DNA from: Vitrella brassicaformis CCMP3155
Taxonomy: Eukaryota > Protista > Chromerida
DNA: 11,810 nucleotides
Assembly (NCBI GenBank): GCA_001179505.1
Contig: CDMY01000905.1
Coordinates: 1 to 11,810 of the forward strand
Reading direction: 5' to 3'
In this document: one piece after another, positions 1 through 11,810 of the stretch
Layout of the letters: the number at the start of each line of letters is the position of its first letter
Position numbering within the stretch: the first letter of the stretch is position 1
Translations under genes and position numbers: made by a program
The notes under the pieces: model-generated
The model's database searches: none
What the model saw: the letters and a program-made list of their open reading frames with translations, nothing else
Told to the model about the DNA's origin: nothing

Positions 1-2750
1 ACACGTTTGGACTTGGAGTGTGTGTATATGACGAATGTCTCTGTGCGCGTGTATATGACGAATGTCTCTGTGCGCACACCTGCGCATGCACGTGTGGACT
101 TGGAGTGCGTGTATATGATGAATGTCTCTGTGCGCGTGTATAGACGAATGTCTCTGTGCGCACACCTGCGCATGCACGTGTGGACTTGGAGTGCGTGTAA
201 ATGATGAATATCTGTGTGCGCACACCTGCGCATGCACGTGCGAATGCATGTGTGGACTTGGAGTGCGTGTAAACGACGAATGTCTCTGTGCGCACACCTG
301 CGCATGCACGTGCGAATGCATGTGTGGACTTGGAGTGCGTGTATATGATGAATGTCTCTGTGCGCACACCTGCGCATGCACGTGCGCACGCATGTGTGGA
401 CTTGGAGTGCGTGTATATGATGAATATCTCTGTGCGCACACCTGCGCATGCAGGCGTCGACTTTGAGTGTGTATGTATGATGAATATCTGTGTGCGCACA
501 GCTGCGCATGCACGCGTGGACTTGGAAGATGCGTATAAGATGCGTATATGATGAATGCTTCCTTCGCATTTACGTTTGGACTTGGAGTGTGTGTATATGA
601 TGAATGTCTGTATGTGCACACCCCTCCGCATCCACGTATGGACTTTGGAGTGGGTGTATGCCATGAGTGTCTCCCTCTTTGCGCATACCTGGGTGTACAC
701 GCGTGGGCTTGGAGTGTGTGTATGTCATTGATTCCCTGTGCGCACACCCGCGCATGCACGTACGTACACACACAATAAATGTCTGTATGCGCACACCTGC
801 GCATGCACGTTTGGACTTGGAGCGTGTGTATATAATGATCTTCTCTCTGCACACACCTGCGCATGTACGCGTGGACTTGGAGTGTGCGTATATGATGAAT
901 GTCCCTGTGCGCACGCCTGCACATGCACATTTGGACTTGGAGCGTGTGTATGCGATGAATCTCTTTGTGCGCACACCTGCGCATGCACGAGTCGACTTGG
1001 AGCGTGTGTATGCGATGAATCTCTTTGTGCGCACACAAGGTGTGCGCATGCACGAGTCGACTTGGAGTGTGTGTATATAATGAAGGTCTCTGTGCGCACA
1101 CCTGTGCATGAGGTGTGTGAGTGCATGTTTGGACTTTGATGAACGTTCCTGTGCGAACGCCTGCGCATGCACGAGTGGACTTGGAGTGCGTGTATATGAT
1201 GAATCTCTTTGTGCGCACACCTGCGCATGCACGCGTCGACTTGGCCAGGTGTGCGCATGCACGCGTCGACTTGGAGTGCGTGTGTATGATGAATGTCTCT
1301 GTACGCACACCTGCGCACGCACGGGTTGACTTGGACTTCGTATGCATACCTGCGCATGCAGGCGTCGACTTGGAGTGGGTGTATATAATGAATGTCTGTA
1401 TGTACACACCTCTGTGCATGCACGTATGCACTTTGGAGTGGGTGTGTATGATGAATGTCTCTGTGCGCACACCTGCGCATGCACGGGTTGACTTGGAGTT
1501 TGTATGCATACCTACGCATGCAGGCGTCGACTTGGAGTGTGTATGTATGATGAATATCTGTGTGCGCACAGCTGCGCATGCACGCGTGGACTTGGAAGAT
1601 GCGTATATGATGAATGCTTCCTTCGCATTCACGTTTGGACTTGGAGTGTGTGTATATGATGAATGTCTGTATGTGCACACCCCTCCGCATGCACGTATGC
1701 ACTTTGGAGTGGGTGTATGCCATGAGTGTCTCCCTCTTTGCGCATACCTGGGTGTACACGCGTGGGCTTGGAGTGTGCGTATATGATGAATGTCCCTGTG
1801 CGCACGCCTGCACATGCACATTTGGACTTGGAGCATGTGTATACGATGAATATCTGTGTGCGCACACCTGCGCATGCACGAGTCGACTTGGAGTGCGTGT
1901 ATATGATGAATCTCTTTGTGCGCACACCTGCGCATGCACGCGTCGATGGAGCGTGTGTATGTGATGAATGTCTTTGTGCGTATGTGATGAATGTCTTTGT
2001 GCGCACACCTGCGCATGCACGAGTCGACTTGGAGTGTGTGTATATGATGAATGTCTTTGTGCGCACACCTGCGCATGCAGGCGTCGATTTGGAGGGTATG
2101 TGTATGTGATGAACATGCACTTTTGGACGTGGAGTGTGTGTATGTGATGAACATGCACTTTTTGACGTGGAGTGTGTGCATATGATGAATGTCTCTGTAC
2201 GCACACCTGCGCATGCACGTTTGGACCTGGAGTGTGTGTATATGCTGAATGTCTGTATGTGCATCCCCCTGCGCATGCACGTATGGACTTTGGAGTGGGT
2301 GTGTATGATGAATGTCTCTGTGCGCACACCTGCGCATGCACGGGTCCACTTGGAGTTTGTATGCACACCTGCGCATGCAGGCGTCGATTGGAGTGGATGA
2401 ATGTCTTTGTGCGCACCCCTGCGCATGCACGCGTCGATGGAGTGTGTGTATATGCTGAATGTCTGTATGTGCACCCCCCTGCGCATGCACGTATGGACTT
2501 TGGAGTGGGTGCATATGATGAATGTCTCTGTACGCACCCCTGCGCATGCACGGCTTGACTTGGACTTTGTATGCATACCTGCGCATGCACGTGTGGACTT
2601 GGAGTGGGTGTATGTGATGAAAACCTCTGTGCGCACACCTATGCGTACAATTGCGTATGCACGTTTGGACGTGGAGTGTGTGTATATGTTGAATGTCTGT
2701 ATGTGCACACCCCTGTGCATGCACGTATATCGCCTATGTATGTATGTGCA
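1..2750 (+). repeat. Satellite array, ~60-bp unit (consensus approx. GTGCGCACACCTGCGCATGCACGTGTGGACTTGGAGTGTGTGTATATGATGAATGTCTCT), roughly 45 degenerate units; runs off the window start
   Basis: The unit recurs directly throughout. The recurrent 20-aa pseudo-translation VRTPAHARVDLECVYMMNVS confirms the 60-nt period. Many internal indels and partial units. The right boundary is approximate. Confidence 0.97.
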
Positions 2751-3325
2751 AGTGTGGATGCCATTTGTCCTAGCAACTCTGGTCTTGGATAGAGTTGTTT
2801 GGCGGTGTGCCCCTCTCTGGTGACAATGACTAGAAGATCAATTCTTGCTCTGCCGTGTTGTGTGTGTTGTGATTTCGTAAATGTATTTGTTGGTTGAGAA
2901 TTTGGCTCGTCTGAGCGTGATCAAGTAAATTCCGTAGACCTATGGTGTTGGCAAGGCTTTCATTCACATCCCCCTTCAGCTCTCTCCCATTCTCCTTGCC
3001 CTCCCAGCACGACAGCCGGTCAGTCAACCCCAATACTCACGCCCATGTCGGAAATGGATGCACGCACATATATATGCACCGCACTGCTCTGCCTGCCTGC
3101 CTGTCTGCCTGCCCGCGTAGGAAAGGAAGAACAAAACAGCGTACGATGTATGGACGGATGACATGCAAAAAGAACAACGGCCGGACGGCCCTTCAACAAA
3201 GACACCCGACCCAGCCCCAGTGATTGCGGACACAACAGTGATTTGCACAATGCACACTCTCTCATGCAGCCGACACGACAAACCGTCAGTTGCGGTCAGT
3301 CGGATGGATGGCTGGCCTCTATGTC

Positions 3326-4447
3326 TCACCCCTCCCTCTCTGCCTCCAGGGCATGCACGCGCCTCTGCAGCTCCTGAACGACGGCTGCCATGGTGTAAAA
3401 CATATGGTCCATGTCGATGTACAGTGTCTCGGTGGGTTCCAAGCCCTCAACCGCCGCACTACTGGCAGACACCGCCTCTGAGAGAAAGGAGGAGAGCCAG
3501 CCATACCACACACAGAGACATGCATGCTTACCCGGTAACACTCTCTGCAACTCCTGCGCCAACACCCCTACAGCAGGCAAATCAGACAGACAAACCGAGA
3601 GACGCACGTGTCTCATGCACGCGAGGGACCCCTCAATTGCTCACGCGTACACTTACCGATGTGCACTTTGTCTCCGTCTTCACCTCGCACCTGCGCTTGG
3701 TCCCACTGGAAGTTCTTCAGAGGCAACTCGGCGAACTGCATGAATCAAAGACAGACAGACGGATAAGGGAGCACTGATGTCGATCTGTCCGTCCAGAGCG
3801 GTGTGTAGGGCTCACACGCTCACTTACTTTGTCGTATGCCTCCTGCACCGATTCAGCCGTCACGTCCTGCAGAAAGGCAGCCAAGAAGCCGAGCACAAAG
3901 CAGCTCTGGCCGGCGCGTATGCCAGCATACCTACCTGTATGTTCCTCTTGGACCTCTCGTCAGAGAGTCCTTTCTCAACGGTGCGGTAGATTCTGGTTGT
4001 GAATATCTTCCTGCGCGCAGAGCATGCACAGCACAGCAGACACACGGACGCGAAGAGCGATGCATGCCACTGCATGGTGCAGTGCAGTGCGTCGTGTGTG
4101 CACGTATTGCTAGCATGCCAGATGTTGTGGTCCTCTCCACATCCGATGATGCCTGCAAGCAGACAGGCAGACAGGCAAGCGAAGGGACAAGGAAATGCGA
4201 GTGATGTGACGCTGACGCCGGTGAGCTCACCAAAGCCGTCACTCGGTGACCCCTCGGTGTTCTGGACCACAAGGGCAGGATGCAGCTCGCCAGTATCGGG
4301 GTCCTCATCACCCGCATTCGCACGGCACGACTCCTCAGACCATTGTCGGGTGCTGACGACGCTATTGCTGATGGGATCCGCAGCCACGCACGACACACAC
4401 CCAAGGGCGACGAGCACAATTGCGGCACGAGCCATCACGGGAGGCAT
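3326..4447 (-). CDS. Putative secreted Peptidase S74 / intramolecular chaperone autoprocessing (ICA) domain protein, 7 exons, ~211-215 aa
   Basis: Exons (minus): 4447 or 4435-4231, 4152-4104, 4010-3935, 3866-3828, 3735-3657, 3567-3532, 3477-3326. All six introns are GT-AG (78, 93, 68, 92, 89, 54 nt) with matching phases, no stops, TGA end. Protein: MARAAIVLVALGCVSCVAA-DPISN...IYRTVEKGL-SDERSKRNIQDVTAESVQEAYDKFAELPLKNFQWD...KVHIGVLAQELQRVLPEAV...LYIDMDHMFYTMAAVVQELQRRVHALEAEREG. This matches the S74 pattern SDxRxK...W...GxxAQExxxxxPEAV...coiled coil. The intron-2 donor could instead be the GC at 4118 (same phase). Confidence 0.88.
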
Positions 4448-5036
4448 ATTCTCGGCCCAAAGCAAGCGGTGAGGGCGGATTTTTGATGATTCGGATTCGG
4501 CGCGGATTCTCGCTCGATCCGCAGGATCGTCGTCCCTTTTCCATGTTTTGTGGTTTGGGGTGGTGGGCGCCGCCACCACAGCGGGTAGATAGCTGCAGAT
4601 CCAGCAAATGCAGGTGCAAGAATGGCGTAACGAATGAAGTAAGCGACCGCCGCCATTCTCGCAACATCGCTTCCGGCACAAACGCAACGAATGAGGCACA
4701 ACGCACCCAAGAATCACGCGCAGACGACACCAATACACGCATGCCTCGTCCTAGCTGTCAGGTGCTCCGATCTGTATCAATGAGGTTAGTAGTCCGTCAT
4801 GTCCATGGGACGCTTTAACTTGTTGATTGGCACACGCACACATGCTGCGTAGAGCATGAAATGCATACATCCGGCGCAAACATCCAGTCCAAGGTGTCTC
4901 AGTGCAGTCAGTGCAGGAACGGATGACACACAAAGCAGATAGTCACTGTACAGCTGGCTGCACACCAGACACATGCATGCACTGAAACACAGGACAGAAA
5001 TTCATTATCCCCGACTGTCTGTCCTCATTCATGTTT

Positions 5037-6657
5037 CTAGCCTTCTGCTGCACGCTCTTCTACCACCATCGCGACACAGATGTACTGAAAATCCCAACCA
5101 GGTGGCTCATTGTCATACACATGATATCGCTCCTCATATTCAGGATGTACTCGTATGCAGAATGCTCTGCGTACCGCTGCTGGTTGCGCCCAAGCATACC
5201 CGCGCCCAGCATTTGTTGTTTTCAAGGGACTCGAGTACTGGTACAGGAAGTGGTTGCTCCATTCAGGGCAGCAGGCCTCCTCAAAAGCTCTCGCGAAGAT
5301 GTCACAATCCTTCATGTTGAGGGGACAATTAGGAAAGAGCGCCTTCAGACGCGCCTCCTCAAGTTCGTCATCATCGTATTCGTTGTTTTGGCGCTTTTTC
5401 GCTCTGATCCCCTCAACATAGCTCCTTATCGCAGCGGCAGAGTCCTCATCGACCAGCCCGCACTGCCACATCTGACAACGATCTTCTCCGTATATTTAGA
5501 TGCCAGGAACATCTTGAGATCGACTTGAAAGTGTTGGGACAGCACTTGATAGAGGTAGCTGTCGACTCACCGAGATGCTCCAGGGACATTGACGAAGGCG
5601 TGTAATCGTGCTGCAAATGGATGACGTAGCTGTTGTCCTTCCTCTCTCTCTCCCAGTAGGATAGCTGGGTCTGAGGCAATGCGACACATAGATAGATATC
5701 ACATTACCAGGCTGCTCTATTTCTCGCTCACCAGCAAGTGCTTGAAGTGGTAGTGAAGTGAGTCGATCATGTCTTGTAGCGAAGGAGCCAAGAAGGCCCC
5801 TGCCTGCGGTGCCATCTCAGTCACCCGTCTTCTCTGCAGATTGTACGCCAGCACCAGACGATAGCCCGACGTAATGGGTGCCACGCTGTGGGGAATGTCG
5901 GCAAAGAAGGCCACCCACCGACACCTCTTCGCCGCCAGGGCACGCTGTGTCTGCGCTTTGAAGCCGCTGGAGTTGAAGCCCTCTGTTTGCTCGAGCAGGA
6001 AGTCGCCCCTACGGTAGCTGGTGGGCATAAAGACGAGGAGCGATGCGAAGTGATCATCGGACCGTTGTGTCAATAGATGAATCAAAAGAAGGAGACAATA
6101 TATGTCCGCGTGTTCCTCGCTCGTCCTCTTTGCCTGTGTGTCTTTGTGTGCTTGAAAGAAGTCGCCCTTACGATACAGCAGCACCTTGTGCAGGTCGGCC
6201 GTCACCTGGCTGCCCGGCGACATCTCGGTTGCCACCTCGTCGCACACTCGCCAACATCGCACCCCAGTCGCCCGCATGACACCCAATCGTCAGCTCATCC
6301 GCTGAGACCTCCCTCGCCTGCCGCACCGCCAGGTCGACCACCGTGTTGTTCCAAATGCCCACCGGTGATTGCCATGCCTGTGTGTCGTAGATCTTCTTGA
6401 AGCCCCTGGATAAGAAGGTCGCCCCTTTTGCAGTGTTGCAGTTAGGCTCCAGCGCCCAGTTGGCCGCCTTGGGTGGGGATGAAGTCGATGGTGCCTGCGA
6501 TGAATGGTCCCGGGGCGTCGTGCTTCCTCAGGTAATCAATCGCCCTTGTCCAGCGCCGTGTCGAGGTCCAACATATCCGGTGGATCCCCACAGAATGAGC
6601 ATGCTTGCAATCCCCACAGAATGAGCATCCCAGGACGCGATTCAATGGCATCCGACG
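5037..6657 (-). pseudogene. Disrupted 2OG-Fe(II)-dependent oxygenase gene (family with upstream TVVDxxVR motif and downstream HxYT motif)
   Basis: LHKVLLYRKGDFFQAHKDTQ (HxD at 6148-6140), WVAFFADIPHSVAPITSGYRLVLAYNL (distal His 5890-5888, Arg 5860-5858), upstream QSPVGIWNNTVVDLAVR and downstream IHLQHDYT. GT-AG introns at 5731-5671 and 5570-5513. Lesions: 26-nt duplication (6584-6628), frameshifts near 6544, 6474 and 6245, a GC..AA intron-like insert (6133-6065), and an in-frame TAA (5498-5496). Confidence 0.85.
6584..6628. repeat. 19-bp perfect direct repeat (atccccacagaatgagcat) with a 7-nt spacer
   Basis: Copies read directly at 6584-6602 and 6610-6628. Confidence 0.95.
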
Positions 6658-7264: not shown

Positions 7265-7725
7265 ATAACGCCTGTGCACAAACATGTGGATTTGCAGAGG
7301 GTGTATGAAATATATATCTCTGTACACATACCTGCGCACGCACGCGTGGATCTGCAGGGAATGTATGTGATGGATATCTCTGTGCACACACCAATGCACA
7401 CACACATGGATTTGGAGCAGGTGTTTGATAAATGTCCTCGTACGTATACCTGTGCACACAAATGTGGACTTGCAGAGGGTGTATAAAACAAATGTCTCTG
7501 TATACATACCTGTGCACGCAGCGTGAACTTGTAGAAGCATATGATGAATCCCTCTGTGCACACATATGTACACACGCACGTGGACTTGGAGAGGGAGTAT
7601 GAAATAAATATGTCTGTACGCACACCTACGCACGCACGCATGGACTCGGAGTTGGTGCATGTGATAAATGTCTCTATACGCATACCTGCGCATACATGCG
7701 TGGACTTGGAGGGGGTGTATTATAA
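7265..7725 (+). repeat. Internal, more diverged array of the same ~60-bp satellite, ~8 units
   Basis: The cctg(c/t)gca core recurs near 7271, 7331, 7391, 7450, 7509, 7565, 7625 and 7685, with gga(c/t)ttg(c/g)ag between cores. Same orientation as the flanking arrays. Confidence 0.9.
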
Positions 7726-10155: not shown

Positions 10156-10310
10156 ATAGAGGTAATCTTCCAAGGGTAAGGTTTGACCGAGTAATTAATT
10201 ACACAGAACAATAACTTTATTCAATACTTATAATTCACTTTGTTCCTTTTAAATAAATGGAACACATATATATAGAGGGAGAAAATGATAAGCGATATTG
10301 AAGCAGACAA

Positions 10311-11810
10311 TATGATGAACGTCCCTGTACGCATACCTGCGCATGCACGTTTGAACTTGCGTGTGTGAATATGATAAATGTCTCTGTGCGCACACCAGGC
10401 GTACGCACACCTGCGCATGCACGCTTGGGCTTGAAGTGTGTGAATATGACCCGGTGCGCACACCTGCGCATGCACGTTTGTACTTGGAGTGTGTGAATAT
10501 GATGAACGTCCCTGTGCGCATACCTGCGCATGCACGTTTGAACTTGCGTGTGTGAATATGACAAATGTCTCTCTGCGCACACGAGGCGTACGCACACCTG
10601 CGCATGCACGCTTGGACTTGAAGTGTGTGAATATGACCCAGTGCGCACACCTGCGCATGCACGTTTGGACGTAGAGTGTGTGTATACCATGAATGTCTGT
10701 GTGCGCACACCTGTACATACACGTTTGGACTTGGAGTGTGTTTATATGATGAATGTCTCGGTACGCACACCTGCGCATGCACGTTTGAATGTCTCTGTGC
10801 GCGCACCTGCGCATGCACGTGTGGACTTGGAGTGTGTGTATATGATGAATATCTCTGTGCGCACACCTGTGCATACACGTTTGGACTTGGAGTGTGTGTA
10901 TATGATGAATATCTTTGTGCGCACACCTGCGCACGCACGACCTGCGCATGCACGTTTGGACTTGGAGTGTGTATATATGATGAATGTCTGTGTGCGCACA
11001 CCTGCGCATACACGTGTGGACTTGGAGTGTGTGTATACCATGAATGTCTCTTTACGCACACCTGCGCATGCACGTGTTGGCTTGGAGTGTGTGTATATGA
11101 TGAATGTCTATGTGCGCACACCTGTGCATACACGTTTGGACTTGGAGTGTGTGTATATGATGAACGTCCCTGTGCGCACACCTTGGAGTGTGTGTATATG
11201 ATGAATATCTCTGTGCACACACCTGCGCATGCACGTTTGGACTTGGAGTGTGTGTATATGATGAATGTCTGTCTGCGCACACCTGCGCATACACGTGTGG
11301 ACTTGGAGTGTGTGTACATGATGAATGTCTCTTTACACACACCTGCGCACGCACGTGTTTGCTTGGAGTGTGTGCATATGATGAATGTCTATGTGCGCAC
11401 ACCTGTGCATACACGTTTGGACTTGGAGTGTGTGTATATGATGAATGTCTCGGTACGCAGGTGTGGTGTATATGATGAATGTCTCGATACGCACACCTGC
11501 GCATGCACGCTTGGACTTGAAGTGTGTGAATATGACCCAGTGCGCACACCTGCGCATGCACGTTTGGACTTGGAGTGTGTGTATATAATGAATGTCCTTA
11601 TCCGCACACCTGGGCAGGCACGTTTGAACTTGCGTGCGTGACTAGGATGAACGTCCCTGTGCACACACCTGCGCATGCACGTTTGGACTTGGTGTGTGTT
11701 TATATGATGAATGTCTCGGTACGCACACCTGCGCATGCACGCTTGGACTTGAAGTCTGTGAATATGACCCAGTGCGCACACCTGCGCATGCACGTTTGGA
11801 CTTGGAGTGT
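10311..11810 (+). repeat. Satellite array, same ~60-bp family, ~25 units; runs off the window end
   Basis: Same consensus and orientation as 1-2750. Carries its own variants (cttgaagtgtgtgaatatgaccc, gtttgaacttgcgtg). Confidence 0.97.

What the first reader, a model, noticed from the sequence alone, without database searches (positions are those of the whole stretch)
3326..4447. Intron-rich, apparently secreted protein with a phage-tailspike/MYRF-type self-cleaving chaperone and only a tiny cargo
Seen: the spliced product has an intact Ser-Asp-x-Arg-x-Lys motif (Ser 3964-3962, Lys 3949-3947), GVLAQEL..VLPEAV, and a terminal coiled coil ending at the stop. The domain is invisible in the ORF track because it is spread over five exons. 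Established: S74/ICA domains trimerise, fold the upstream segment into a triple-stranded beta structure and autocleave via a Ser-Lys dyad. This occurs in phage endosialidase/tail fibres and in MYRF/MrfA, where the released part is a transcription factor. Inference: cleavage here would release an ~81-aa secreted trimer (DPISN...EKGL) with no DNA-binding domain and no downstream TM helix. That would be a minimal extracellular autoprocessing module, possibly a domesticated phage/bacterial gene that has since gained six introns. Its intactness beside two decayed neighbours suggests selection.
Basis: partly seen in the sequence, partly recalled or inferred. Interest (0 to 1): 0.8.

Follow-up and report, generated by a model that had tools for sequence, protein, structure and literature searches.

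The report
Small secreted self-cleaving S74 protein, Vitrella
This is a real, expressed, seven-exon gene of the coral-associated alga Vitrella brassicaformis for a 210-residue, probably secreted protein ending in the trimerising, self-cleaving "chaperone" domain known from phage tail fibres and animal MYRF; databases already label the domain, it is one of about 35 such loci in this genome, and its function is untested.

Summary
The gene lies on the minus strand at 4447..3326, with seven exons and six introns. Spliced transcript contigs from two studies confirm it; a DNA run holds the unspliced form. One correction: intron 2 is a GC-AG intron (4118..4011), so the protein has 210 residues, not 215, and the predicted released part has 76 residues, not 81.

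The genome is Vitrella brassicaformis CCMP3155 (72,700,666 bp, 1064 scaffolds). The protein is already on record as CEM36715.1 / A0A0G4GZQ5, "Peptidase S74 domain-containing protein".

- **Domain:** Pfam PF13884 scores 57.8 bits, E 1.4e-15.
- **Motif:** S100-D-E-R-S-K105 is intact.
- **Fold:** the predicted structure matches only solved ICA structures. MyRF 7dc3 is best, then endoNF, T5 and GA-1.
- **Trimer:** the homotrimer model scores 0.85 against 0.00 for the best control.
- **Targeting:** the only hydrophobic stretch is an N-terminal signal-like segment.

It is not unique. About 35 loci in this genome match the family profile. They form one clan apart from MYRF and bacterial or viral sequences, and some have lost the catalytic dyad. 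No relative turned up outside Vitrella. The phage-origin and "decayed neighbours" arguments are not supported. Cleavage, secretion and biological role remain untested. This scan had already noted paralogues on other pieces of this genome.

The parts
4448..4500 (-). 5' UTR, at least this far: transcript contig X1 reaches 4500. No ATG lies upstream of 4447 in this stretch.
4231..4447 (-). Exon 1: start codon 4447-4445. Signal-like segment, residues 1-23 (4447..4379). Variable acidic head carrying the family motif R-Q-W-x-E-x-x-C41.
4153..4230 (-). Intron 1 (78 nt, GT-AG). In frame and stop-free, hence the misleading 292-aa ORF 3860..4738.
4119..4152 (-). Exon 2: G-I-I-G-C77-G-E-D-H-N-I-W. Family-invariant G73, G76 and C77. 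Start of the stalk segment.
4011..4118 (-). Intron 2 (108 nt, GC-AG). The naive GT site at 4103 is not the one used in the transcripts.
3935..4010 (-). Exon 3: end of the stalk (KIFTTRIYRTVEKGL). Predicted cleavage site is L99|S100 (3965|3964). Motif S100-D-E-R103-S-K105 (3964..3947).
3867..3934 (-). Intron 3 (68 nt, GT-AG)
3828..3866 (-). Exon 4 (DVTAESVQEAYDK), ICA helix 1
3736..3827 (-). Intron 4 (92 nt, GT-AG)
3657..3735 (-). Exon 5 (FAELPLKNFQWDQAQVRGEDGDKVHI-G)
3568..3656 (-). Intron 5 (89 nt, GT-AG)
3532..3567 (-). Exon 6 (VLAQELQRVLP), the most conserved ICA block: G149, L155, P160
3478..3531 (-). Intron 6 (54 nt, GT-AG, in frame and stop-free)
3326..3477 (-). Exon 7: rest of the ICA domain and the C-terminal helix (residues about 183-209, 3412..3332), predicted to form the central triple coiled coil. 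Stop codon 3328-3326.
3100..3325 (-). 3' UTR. Both transcript contigs cover it and run on 151-207 nt beyond the stretch that was laid.

Best explanation
A nuclear gene of Vitrella brassicaformis encodes a 210-aa precursor that enters the secretory pathway through a cleavable N-terminal signal (residues 1 to about 23). In the ER lumen or beyond, three chains assemble through the C-terminal S74/ICA domain. That domain has a central triple coiled coil (residues about 183-209) surrounded by helices.

Assembly brings the preceding stalk segment (G73 to L99, the counterpart of the beta-helical stalk of MYRF and of bacterial or phage fibre tips) into a three-chain structure. It also positions Ser100 and Lys105 for autoproteolysis of the L99-S100 bond.

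The products would be two acidic trimers:
- a 3 x 76-residue trimer (8.3 kDa per chain): a variable head with two family-invariant cysteines, C41 and C77, plus a short stalk;
- a 3 x 111-residue ICA trimer.

The gene is one member of a Vitrella-specific expansion of about 35 loci. These combine the same module with heads of different length, including a mucin-like Pro/Thr-rich one. This suggests extracellular or cell-surface trimeric fibre or knob proteins.

Shown: gene structure, expression, domain identity, motif, family.
Inferred from homology and models: trimer, stalk, cleavage.
Inferred from sequence features only: secretion.
Guess: extracellular matrix or surface role.
For: - **Gene and expression:** spliced contigs in two studies, unspliced in DNA. 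The public protein is identical to the exon translations.
- **Domain:** PF13884 57.8 bits, E 1.4e-15, profile positions 1-57 of 58. PDB sequence hits are MyRF ICA 7dc3 (E 0.011) and GA-1 3gud.
- **Fold:** in the AF2 model the ICA part has pLDDT above 90. Its 13 best Foldseek PDB matches are all ICA structures: 7dc3 (E 1.7e-6, TM 0.68 by target), 3gw6, 4uw8, 3gud. BFVD gives 351 viral ICA or tail-fibre matches at E <= 1e-3.
- **Dyad:** S100 and K105 align with the catalytic Ser and Lys of MYRF and bacterial proteins. PMC3742443 and PMC8326128 describe the Ser-Lys dyad and its dependence on trimerisation.
- **Trimer:** the homotrimer model scores ipSAE 0.85 in three runs, against 0.00 for the best of three controls. 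Partner pLDDT is at least 72 and the runs share at least 86% of contacts. The tool's calibration: the mark was reached by 21 of 30 solved homomers and 0 of 23 solved single chains. The tightest contacts lie between the C-terminal helices. The interface also covers cargo residues 56-62, 70-78 and 82-99, and C41.
- **Secretion:** the only Kyte-Doolittle 19-residue windows above 1.6 start at residues 1-10. Seven of nine paralogue models have the same. The mature part is acidic (net -7), unlike a plastid transit peptide.
- **Family:** conserved cargo positions are P57, G73, G76 and C77, plus the RxW..C motif. About 35 loci match. Vitrella members form one clan with 98/98 support.
Against: - No biochemical evidence of cleavage, trimerisation or secretion exists.
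- The trimer score may come from the model's memory of solved ICA trimers (caveat).
- The stalk has pLDDT below 50 in the monomer model.
- No signal-peptide predictor was available.
- Several expressed paralogues lack the Ser-Lys motif (P0008, P0015, P0016 and the C592 ORF). Self-cleavage is therefore not indispensable to the family's function.
- A 76-residue product with only about 49 residues ahead of the stalk is very small for a fibre tip.
- No hint of the biological role comes from the neighbouring genes.
Confidence: 0.62

Rival explanations
1. The ICA-like domain serves here mainly as a permanent trimerisation module. The working molecule is the uncleaved trimer, or the ICA trimer itself. 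The tiny 'cargo' is just an N-terminal decoration, and cleavage is slow, conditional or irrelevant.
For: Paralogues without the SDxRxK motif keep the rest of the domain, keep signal-like N-termini and are transcribed (P0015 and P0016 from MMETSP). The ICA part is the best-conserved part of the protein: 47-57% identity to the nearest paralogues, against 33-39% for the head. In MyRF the C-terminal coiled coil drives trimerisation independently of the stalk (PMC8326128).
Against: This gene retains the full canonical S-D-x-R-x-K, including the Arg. So do most of its close paralogues. In every studied ICA protein with an intact dyad the bond is cut.
Confidence: 0.2
2. The gene is an expressed but functionless remnant of a viral (polinton-like or giant-virus) or phage fibre gene. 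It has been reduced to stalk plus chaperone and is drifting in a satellite-rich region.
For: S74 fibre proteins are common in polinton-like viruses of protists (PMC12220804). The same assembly holds an AT-rich island with an rve integrase and an intronless S74 fibre-like ORF. The window gene sits between satellite arrays.
Against: The reading frame is intact across seven exons with correctly spliced mRNA in two studies. GC content is native. Cargo residues, the signal-like segment and the exon layout are conserved across paralogues on other contigs. The family is one clan that excludes the AT-island ORF, which scores only 14 bits against the family profile.
Confidence: 0.08
3. The N-terminal hydrophobic segment is the first part of a bipartite plastid-targeting leader or a signal anchor. 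On this reading the protein acts inside an organelle or stays membrane-bound, and is not secreted.
For: Chromerids target nuclear-encoded plastid proteins through the ER with a signal peptide first (established knowledge). No predictor was run.
Against: The residues after the predicted signal are strongly acidic (net -7 over 76 residues) and lack the features of a transit peptide. Small residues at -3/-1 (V-A-A|D) fit signal peptidase. Two invariant cysteines fit an oxidising extracellular or luminal environment.
Confidence: 0.07

Closest known systems
MYRF / Dictyostelium MrfA ICA domain with its beta-helical stalk (PDB 7dc3; PMC3742443, PMC3828593, PMC8326128)
   Same: Eukaryotic nuclear gene. 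S74/ICA domain with a Ser-Lys dyad and a C-terminal triple coiled coil. It is the best solved match by sequence and by fold. MYRF proteins are the best non-Vitrella hits of paralogue P0001 in 1.84 billion proteins. The stalk segment aligns.
   Different: No NDT80 DNA-binding domain, no MYRF_ICA (PF13887) match, no transmembrane helix or C-terminal domain after the ICA. The topology is luminal or secreted, not cytosolic. The cargo is 76 aa. MYRF does not group with the Vitrella family in the tree.
Phage tailspike and tail-fibre ICA domains (endosialidase endoNF 3gw6, T5 pb1 4uw8, GA-1 gp12 3gud) and bacterial 'tail fiber domain-containing proteins'
   Same: Same Pfam family and fold, same SDxRxK motif, and the G-(V/L)-(L/I)-A-Q-E, P-E-x-V and coiled-coil blocks. 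A short G-x-G stalk motif precedes the cleavage site.
   Different: Those carry large receptor-binding or enzymatic N-terminal parts and lie in viral or bacterial genomes without introns. This one is spliced from seven exons, has the host's GC content, a signal-like N-terminus and almost no cargo.
S74-tipped fibre proteins of polinton-like viruses of protists (PMC12220804) and the AT-rich island on contig C484 of this assembly
   Same: S74 domain in a eukaryote-associated setting. A plausible route by which such a domain reaches a protist genome.
   Different: PLV proteins are large modular fibres, up to 3.9 k residues. The C484 ORF is intronless and AT-rich, falls outside the Vitrella family and scores only 14 bits against its profile.
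Vitrella paralogues (CEM34855.1, CEM20033.1, P0001, CEM12505.1; dyad-less CEL99308.1 and CEM20043.1)
   Same: Same layout: signal-like segment, head with RxW..C, G-x-I-G-C-G stalk, ICA, coiled coil. Identity to the window protein is 22-49%. The subfamily shares the same exon layout.
   Different: Head length and content vary (a mucin-like Pro/Thr-rich extension in CEM12505.1). Some have lost the Ser-Lys motif.

Membership tests
Peptidase S74 / intramolecular chaperone auto-processing (ICA) domain | Match to Pfam PF13884 above the gathering score | tested here: met
   P0013: 57.8 bits against a cut-off of 22, E 1.4e-15, residues 100-163, profile 1-57/58. The exon 4-7 fragment P0007 scores 43.3 bits.
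Peptidase S74 / intramolecular chaperone auto-processing (ICA) domain | Catalytic Ser and Lys five residues apart (S-D-x-R-x-K) at the start of the domain | tested here: met
   S100-D-E-R103-S-K105, read from DNA at 3964..3947. It aligns with the motif in MYRF and bacterial or viral members.
Peptidase S74 / intramolecular chaperone auto-processing (ICA) domain | ICA fold | tested here: met
   In the AF2 model the ICA part has pLDDT above 90. The 13 best PDB matches are all ICA structures: 7dc3, 3gw6, 4uw8, 3gud. This is a predicted structure only.
Peptidase S74 / intramolecular chaperone auto-processing (ICA) domain | Homotrimer held by a C-terminal triple coiled coil | tested here: met
   Model only: ipSAE 0.85 in three runs, best control 0.00, pLDDT at least 72, at least 86% shared contacts. 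The mark was reached by 21 of 30 solved homomers and 0 of 23 single chains. The result may reflect memory of solved ICA trimers.
Peptidase S74 / intramolecular chaperone auto-processing (ICA) domain | Three-chain beta-helical stalk directly upstream of the cleavage site | tested here: inconclusive
   G73 to L99 aligns with the MYRF stalk and the bacterial G-I-G-T segment and lies in the modelled trimer interface. It has pLDDT below 50 in the monomer model.
Peptidase S74 / intramolecular chaperone auto-processing (ICA) domain | Autoproteolysis before the Ser, dependent on Ser and Lys | not testable with these tools
   Needs expression of wild type against S100A and K105A.
MYRF family (membrane-bound transcription factors) | NDT80/PhoG DNA-binding domain upstream of the ICA | tested here: not met
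   No such Pfam hit in P0013 at E <= 10. It is present in the MYRF controls P0005 and P0010.
MYRF family (membrane-bound transcription factors) | MYRF_ICA (PF13887) segment, transmembrane helix and C-terminal domain after the ICA | tested here: not met
   The protein ends at the coiled coil (stop at 3328-3326). There is no PF13887 hit and no hydrophobic stretch beyond the N-terminus.
Phage or viral tail fibre / tailspike | Large receptor-binding or enzymatic part upstream, gene in a viral genome or element | tested here: not met
   Only 76 residues lie upstream. There are six spliceosomal introns and a spliced mRNA, GC content is native, and no viral genes lie in the window.

The most novel reading that the evidence does not exclude
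Vitrella has turned the viral-type ICA chaperone into a general device for making small, covalently locked extracellular trimers. Each of about 35 genes would deliver a different short head on a three-chain stalk, with disulfides between the invariant C41 and C77 of neighbouring chains. After self-cleavage these mini-fibres would build or decorate the cell wall or sporangium, or act as decoys or receptors in interactions with viruses or the coral host. That would be a third, independent cellular use of the ICA domain, beside phage fibres and MYRF, and the first extracellular one in a eukaryote.
Probability: 0.3. Interest if true: 0.7.

Novelty: new variant of a known kind. Interest (0 to 1): 0.5.

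Why it matters
In cellular eukaryotes the ICA domain has been studied in one context only, the MYRF/MrfA membrane-bound transcription factors. Here the same self-cleaving trimerisation device sits in a soluble protein with a signal-like N-terminus, in an alveolate alga related to apicomplexan parasites. It has been expanded into a lineage-specific family and carries almost no cargo.

If cleavage and secretion are confirmed, three things follow:
- The domain would be shown to work in the secretory pathway of a eukaryote.
- The protein would be a natural minimal substrate (about 21 kDa precursor) for studying how an ICA folds a three-chain stalk.
- The dyad-less paralogues would offer a built-in comparison of cleaving and non-cleaving forms.

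It also bears on where the eukaryotic ICA domains came from, which is still open. Against this, the domain label is already in UniProt, the scan has met paralogues before, and nothing here points to the biological role.

Tried and rejected
**The joined step.** Exons were searched one by one by reference. The full-length sequence used later (P0013) is the database's own record, reached through the cluster of the fragment P0007. Exon agreement was checked piece by piece.

**Searches that gave nothing:**
- Single exons against Pfam and against PDB sequences. They are too short.
- A word search with the read-through of exons 1-3. The cluster is represented by a fragment holding exons 4-7 only.
- The look-up of encoding contigs for P0013. 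No record.
- Notes of this scan near the window. None.
- Protein-atlas look-up of the cargo alone. All scores were under 0.9. The only lead was small viral S74 proteins. No fold was assigned to the head.

**Readings rejected:**
- The long ORFs 725..2638 and 10249..11340 are translations of 60-bp satellite arrays, not neighbouring genes.
- The 292-aa ORF 3860..4738 reads through the in-frame introns 1 and 2 and is not a longer protein.
- The C592 locus, at first sight an intronless paralogue, reads through in-frame introns and has lost the dyad.
- Recent capture from the AT-rich island on C484.

**Not tested or not settled:**
- A specific MYRF-Vitrella sister relation could not be tested with the few sequences to hand.
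- No Chromera relative appeared in the protein searches. The Chromera genome itself could not be searched.
Full report
**1. What is in the sequence**

On the minus strand, an ATG at 4447 opens a reading frame that can be followed through seven exons to a TGA at 3328-3326. The exons are:

| Exon | Coordinates |
|---|---|
| 1 | 4447..4231 |
| 2 | 4152..4119 |
| 3 | 4010..3935 |
| 4 | 3866..3828 |
| 5 | 3735..3657 |
| 6 | 3567..3532 |
| 7 | 3477..3326 |

Ser is at 3964-3962 and Lys at 3949-3947, inside S-D-E-R-S-K. The block G-V-L-A-Q-E-L-Q-R-V-L-P-E-A-V is assembled from exons 5, 6 and 7. A terminal helix ends at the stop.

**2. Is the gene model real?**

I laid public runs on 3100..4800.
- Two runs from different studies (X1, X7) each hold one contig that skips exactly six stretches: 54, 89, 92, 68, 108 and 78 nt.
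- A third run (X3) holds the colinear, unspliced sequence.
- Five skips are GT-AG introns at the expected places.
- The sixth (4118..4011) is a GC-AG intron, 15 nt longer than the obvious GT-AG choice. Five residues (HASNT) of the naive model are therefore not in the protein.

The genome holds no second copy of exon 1 or exon 7, so the spliced contigs are cDNA and not a retrocopy. The transcript reaches at least 4500 upstream, with no earlier ATG, and runs beyond 3100 downstream. The CDS is 633 nt, 210 codons.

The runs are kept as contigs, and their RNA label is a guess by the tool. What counts here is the spliced form itself.

**3. Which organism, and is it annotated?**

The assembly has 72,700,666 bases in 1064 contigs. 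That is exactly the figure published for Vitrella brassicaformis CCMP3155 (PMC4501334).

Exon-wise Pfam and PDB searches were blank. A word search with the read-through of exons 1-3 found nothing either.

I reached the record through paralogues:
- A Pfam scan of the genome found other S74 loci.
- One of them led to the annotated paralogue P0001.
- A full HMMER search with P0001 returned a 111-aa fragment, P0007, that is exons 4-7 of this gene.
- Its cluster holds P0013 = CEM36715.1 / UniProt A0A0G4GZQ5, 210 aa, on an 11,810-bp contig, named "Peptidase S74 domain-containing protein".

P0013 contains each exon translation in order, with one residue at each split codon. The public model equals the transcript-supported one. 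Automatic annotation has already made the domain call.

No paper in the library combines Peptidase_S74 or PF13884 with Vitrella or Chromera.

**4. Domain identity**

- **Pfam:** P0013 matches PF13884 at 57.8 bits (cut-off 22), E 1.4e-15, residues 100-163, covering profile positions 1-57 of 58.
- **PDB by sequence:** the best hit is the MyRF ICA domain 7dc3 (E 0.011, residues 100-205), then the GA-1 neck appendage 3gud.
- **Monomer model:** an AlphaFold2 model built on an 18-row alignment has pLDDT above 90 over the ICA part. Its helices and strands follow the ICA order, and it ends in a 27-residue helix.
- **PDB by fold:** the 13 best Foldseek matches are all ICA structures. These are 7dc3 (E 1.7e-6, rmsd 2.9 A over 117 columns), endoNF 3gw6, T5 4uw8 and GA-1 3gud. 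Nothing else is significant.
- **Viral library:** 351 matches at E <= 1e-3, tail fibres with S74 domains among the 50 listed.
- **Alignment:** S100, G149, P160 and V163 are invariant across Vitrella, MYRF, bacterial and viral rows. K105 is kept wherever the Ser is.

**5. Architecture**

- **Signal-like segment.** Residues 1-23 (MPPVMARAAIVLVALGCVSCVAA) are the only hydrophobic stretch. Kyte-Doolittle 19-residue windows above 1.6 start only at residues 1-10. The pattern is basic, then hydrophobic, then V-A-A before D24, as in a signal peptide. Seven of nine paralogue models begin the same way. Of the two that do not, P0008 is shorter at its N-terminus than its transcript-derived relative P0015, which begins with such a segment.
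- **Head.** The part between the signal and Ser100 is 76 residues, 8.3 kDa, pI 4.5, net charge -7, with no N-glycosylation sequon. Residues 24-71 form a variable head with a family motif R-x-W-x-E-x-x-C41 and an invariant P57.
- **Stalk.** G73-x-I-G76-C77-G and the following 22 residues align with the beta-helical stalk of MYRF and with the "G-I-G-T..." segment that precedes the cleavage site in bacterial tail-fibre-domain proteins.
- **After the ICA.** Nothing follows the coiled coil: no TM helix, no MYRF_ICA segment and no DNA-binding domain.

**6. Trimer**

Three copies of residues 24-210 were folded together.
- ipSAE was 0.85, 0.85 and 0.86 in three runs. The best of three controls scored 0.00.
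- Partner pLDDT was at least 72. The runs share at least 86% of contacts.
- In the tool's calibration the mark was reached by 21 of 30 solved homomers and 0 of 23 solved single chains.
- The tool warns that a pass for a family with solved trimers may come from memory, and that the calibration held two copies, not three.

The most confident contacts are between the C-terminal helices of different chains (residues 190-201 in P0013 numbering). This matches the central triple coiled coil that drives MyRF trimerisation (PMC8326128). The interface also includes cargo residues 56-62, 70-78 and 82-99, and C41. The stalk and part of the head are thus modelled as a three-chain unit. I had no coordinates, so the Ser-Lys geometry and a possible C41-C77 disulfide are untested.

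**7. The family**

A profile of seven annotated members finds 63 exon-level matches in this genome. Grouped by position, they make about 35 loci on about 30 contigs. Several are tandem or head-to-head pairs: C204, C277, C520, C429.

- The closest relatives of the window gene are CEM34855.1 (C835, 49% identity) and CEM20033.1 (C520, 45%).
- Exon-by-exon tblastn shows the same order of exons 3 to 7 in C835, C520 and C204. These introns therefore predate the duplications.
- The C55 gene lacks introns 3 and 4.
- Heads differ. CEM12505.1 carries about 230 residues of Pro/Thr-rich, mucin-like sequence before the conserved head.
- A subfamily (CEL99308.1, CEM20042.1, CEM20043.1 and MMETSP transcripts) and the C592 locus have lost S-D-x-R-x-K but keep the rest.
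- Within the window gene's subfamily the ICA part is more conserved (47-57% identity) than the head (33-39%).

**8. Relatives elsewhere and origin**

With P0001, HMMER found only 11 proteins at E <= 1e-3 among 1.84 billion representatives. These were Vitrella paralogues, two MYRF proteins (a sturgeon MYRF at E 5.6e-10, and a metagenomic NDT80+S74+MYRF_ICA protein) and two unnamed proteins from Logan assemblies (P0011, P0012) whose sequences resemble bacterial or viral tail fibres. The family profile, in the word-limited search, added only Vitrella transcripts and bacterial "tail fiber domain-containing" proteins, for example from Phaeodactylibacter. No Chromera protein appeared.

A family HMM scores MYRF at 47-52 bits and bacterial proteins at 36-48 bits.

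In a maximum-likelihood tree of 22 ICA segments:
- All Vitrella members, cleaving and dyad-less, form one clan (98/98).
- MYRF sits among the bacterial or viral rows (80/89 with one of them).
- The AT-island ORF lies outside.

Rows left out: fragments and near-duplicates P0002, P0007, P0014, P0022, P0024-28, P0031 and P0032. The sample is small and was chosen by similarity to Vitrella. It supports one origin followed by expansion, but says nothing firm about the donor.

Polinton-like viruses of protists commonly carry S74-tipped fibres (PMC12220804). They are as good a candidate source as phages.

**9. Surroundings**

The window is a whole 11.8-kb contig. Positions 1 to about 2800, 7271-7720 and about 10300-11810 are arrays of a roughly 60-bp satellite. 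These account for the long ORFs there. No paralogue or decayed copy of this gene lies in the window. The only other gene-like stretch is a weak 2OG-Fe(II) oxygenase-like ORF at 5717-6286 (21.9 bits, below the cut-off).

**10. Verdict**

The finding is real and correctly read in its essentials. It is an expressed, intron-rich gene for a small protein with a signal-like N-terminus, an intact S74/ICA self-cleavage module and a very small upstream part.

Four things temper it:
- The domain is already labelled in public databases.
- The gene is one of a large Vitrella-specific family that this scan has met before on other pieces.
- The phage-origin and selection arguments are not supported by what I could test.
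- Cleavage, trimerisation, secretion and role are inferences.

I rate it a new variant of a known kind, of moderate interest.

Noticed in passing
window 1-2800, 7271-7720, 10300-11810: Arrays of a roughly 60-bp satellite (consensus about CACCTGCGCATGCACG..GGACTTGGAGTGTGTGTATATGATGAATGTCTCTGTGCGCA) flank the gene and fill about half of this 11.8-kb contig. They produce stop-free ORFs of up to 637 aa that are not genes.
   Followed up: partly
window 4011-4118 (minus strand): Intron 2 uses a GC donor (GC-AG). A GT 15 nt downstream would also keep the frame, but it is not the site seen in either transcript contig.
   Followed up: yes
window 3860-4738 and 3326-3616 (minus strand): Introns 1, 2 and 6 are in frame and stop-free. 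An ORF track therefore shows a misleading 292-aa ORF and a 96-aa ORF that read through them.
   Followed up: yes
window 5717-6286 (minus strand): ORF with a weak 2OG-Fe(II) oxygenase match (PF13640, 21.9 bits, below the cut-off of 27). Probably an exon of a neighbouring gene.
   Followed up: partly
G000 contig C484, about 48,000 to at least 64,000 (L055, L056, L001): GC content steps sharply from about 0.50 to 0.29-0.37 over at least 16 kb. The stretch is packed with same-strand, intronless ORFs. These include an rve integrase (PF00665, 32.7 bits) and a 377-aa fibre-like protein ending in an S74 domain (48.8 bits). It is a candidate endogenous polinton-like or virophage-like element, or an assembly chimera. 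Its S74 domain is not close to the native family.
   Followed up: partly
G000 C277:112507-115345, C520:159390-162120, C592:35613-36329 (P0008, P0015, P0016, L025): Paralogues that keep the signal-like segment, head, stalk and ICA-like domain but lack the S-D-x-R-x-K motif (for example ...TRSSLAQVD...). Two sit as head-to-head pairs, and MMETSP transcripts show they are expressed.
   Followed up: partly
G000 C436:54463-55200 (P0009 = CEM12505.1): Paralogue with about 230 residues of Pro/Thr/Asp-rich, mucin-like low-complexity sequence between the signal-like segment and the conserved head. This suggests a heavily glycosylated surface or wall protein.
   Followed up: no
G000 C204:113610-114547 and 115718-116727; C429:9258-9473 and 11831-12413: Tandem duplicates of family members. 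In the C204 copies the motif reads S-D-E-Q-F-K (Gln in place of Arg).
   Followed up: no
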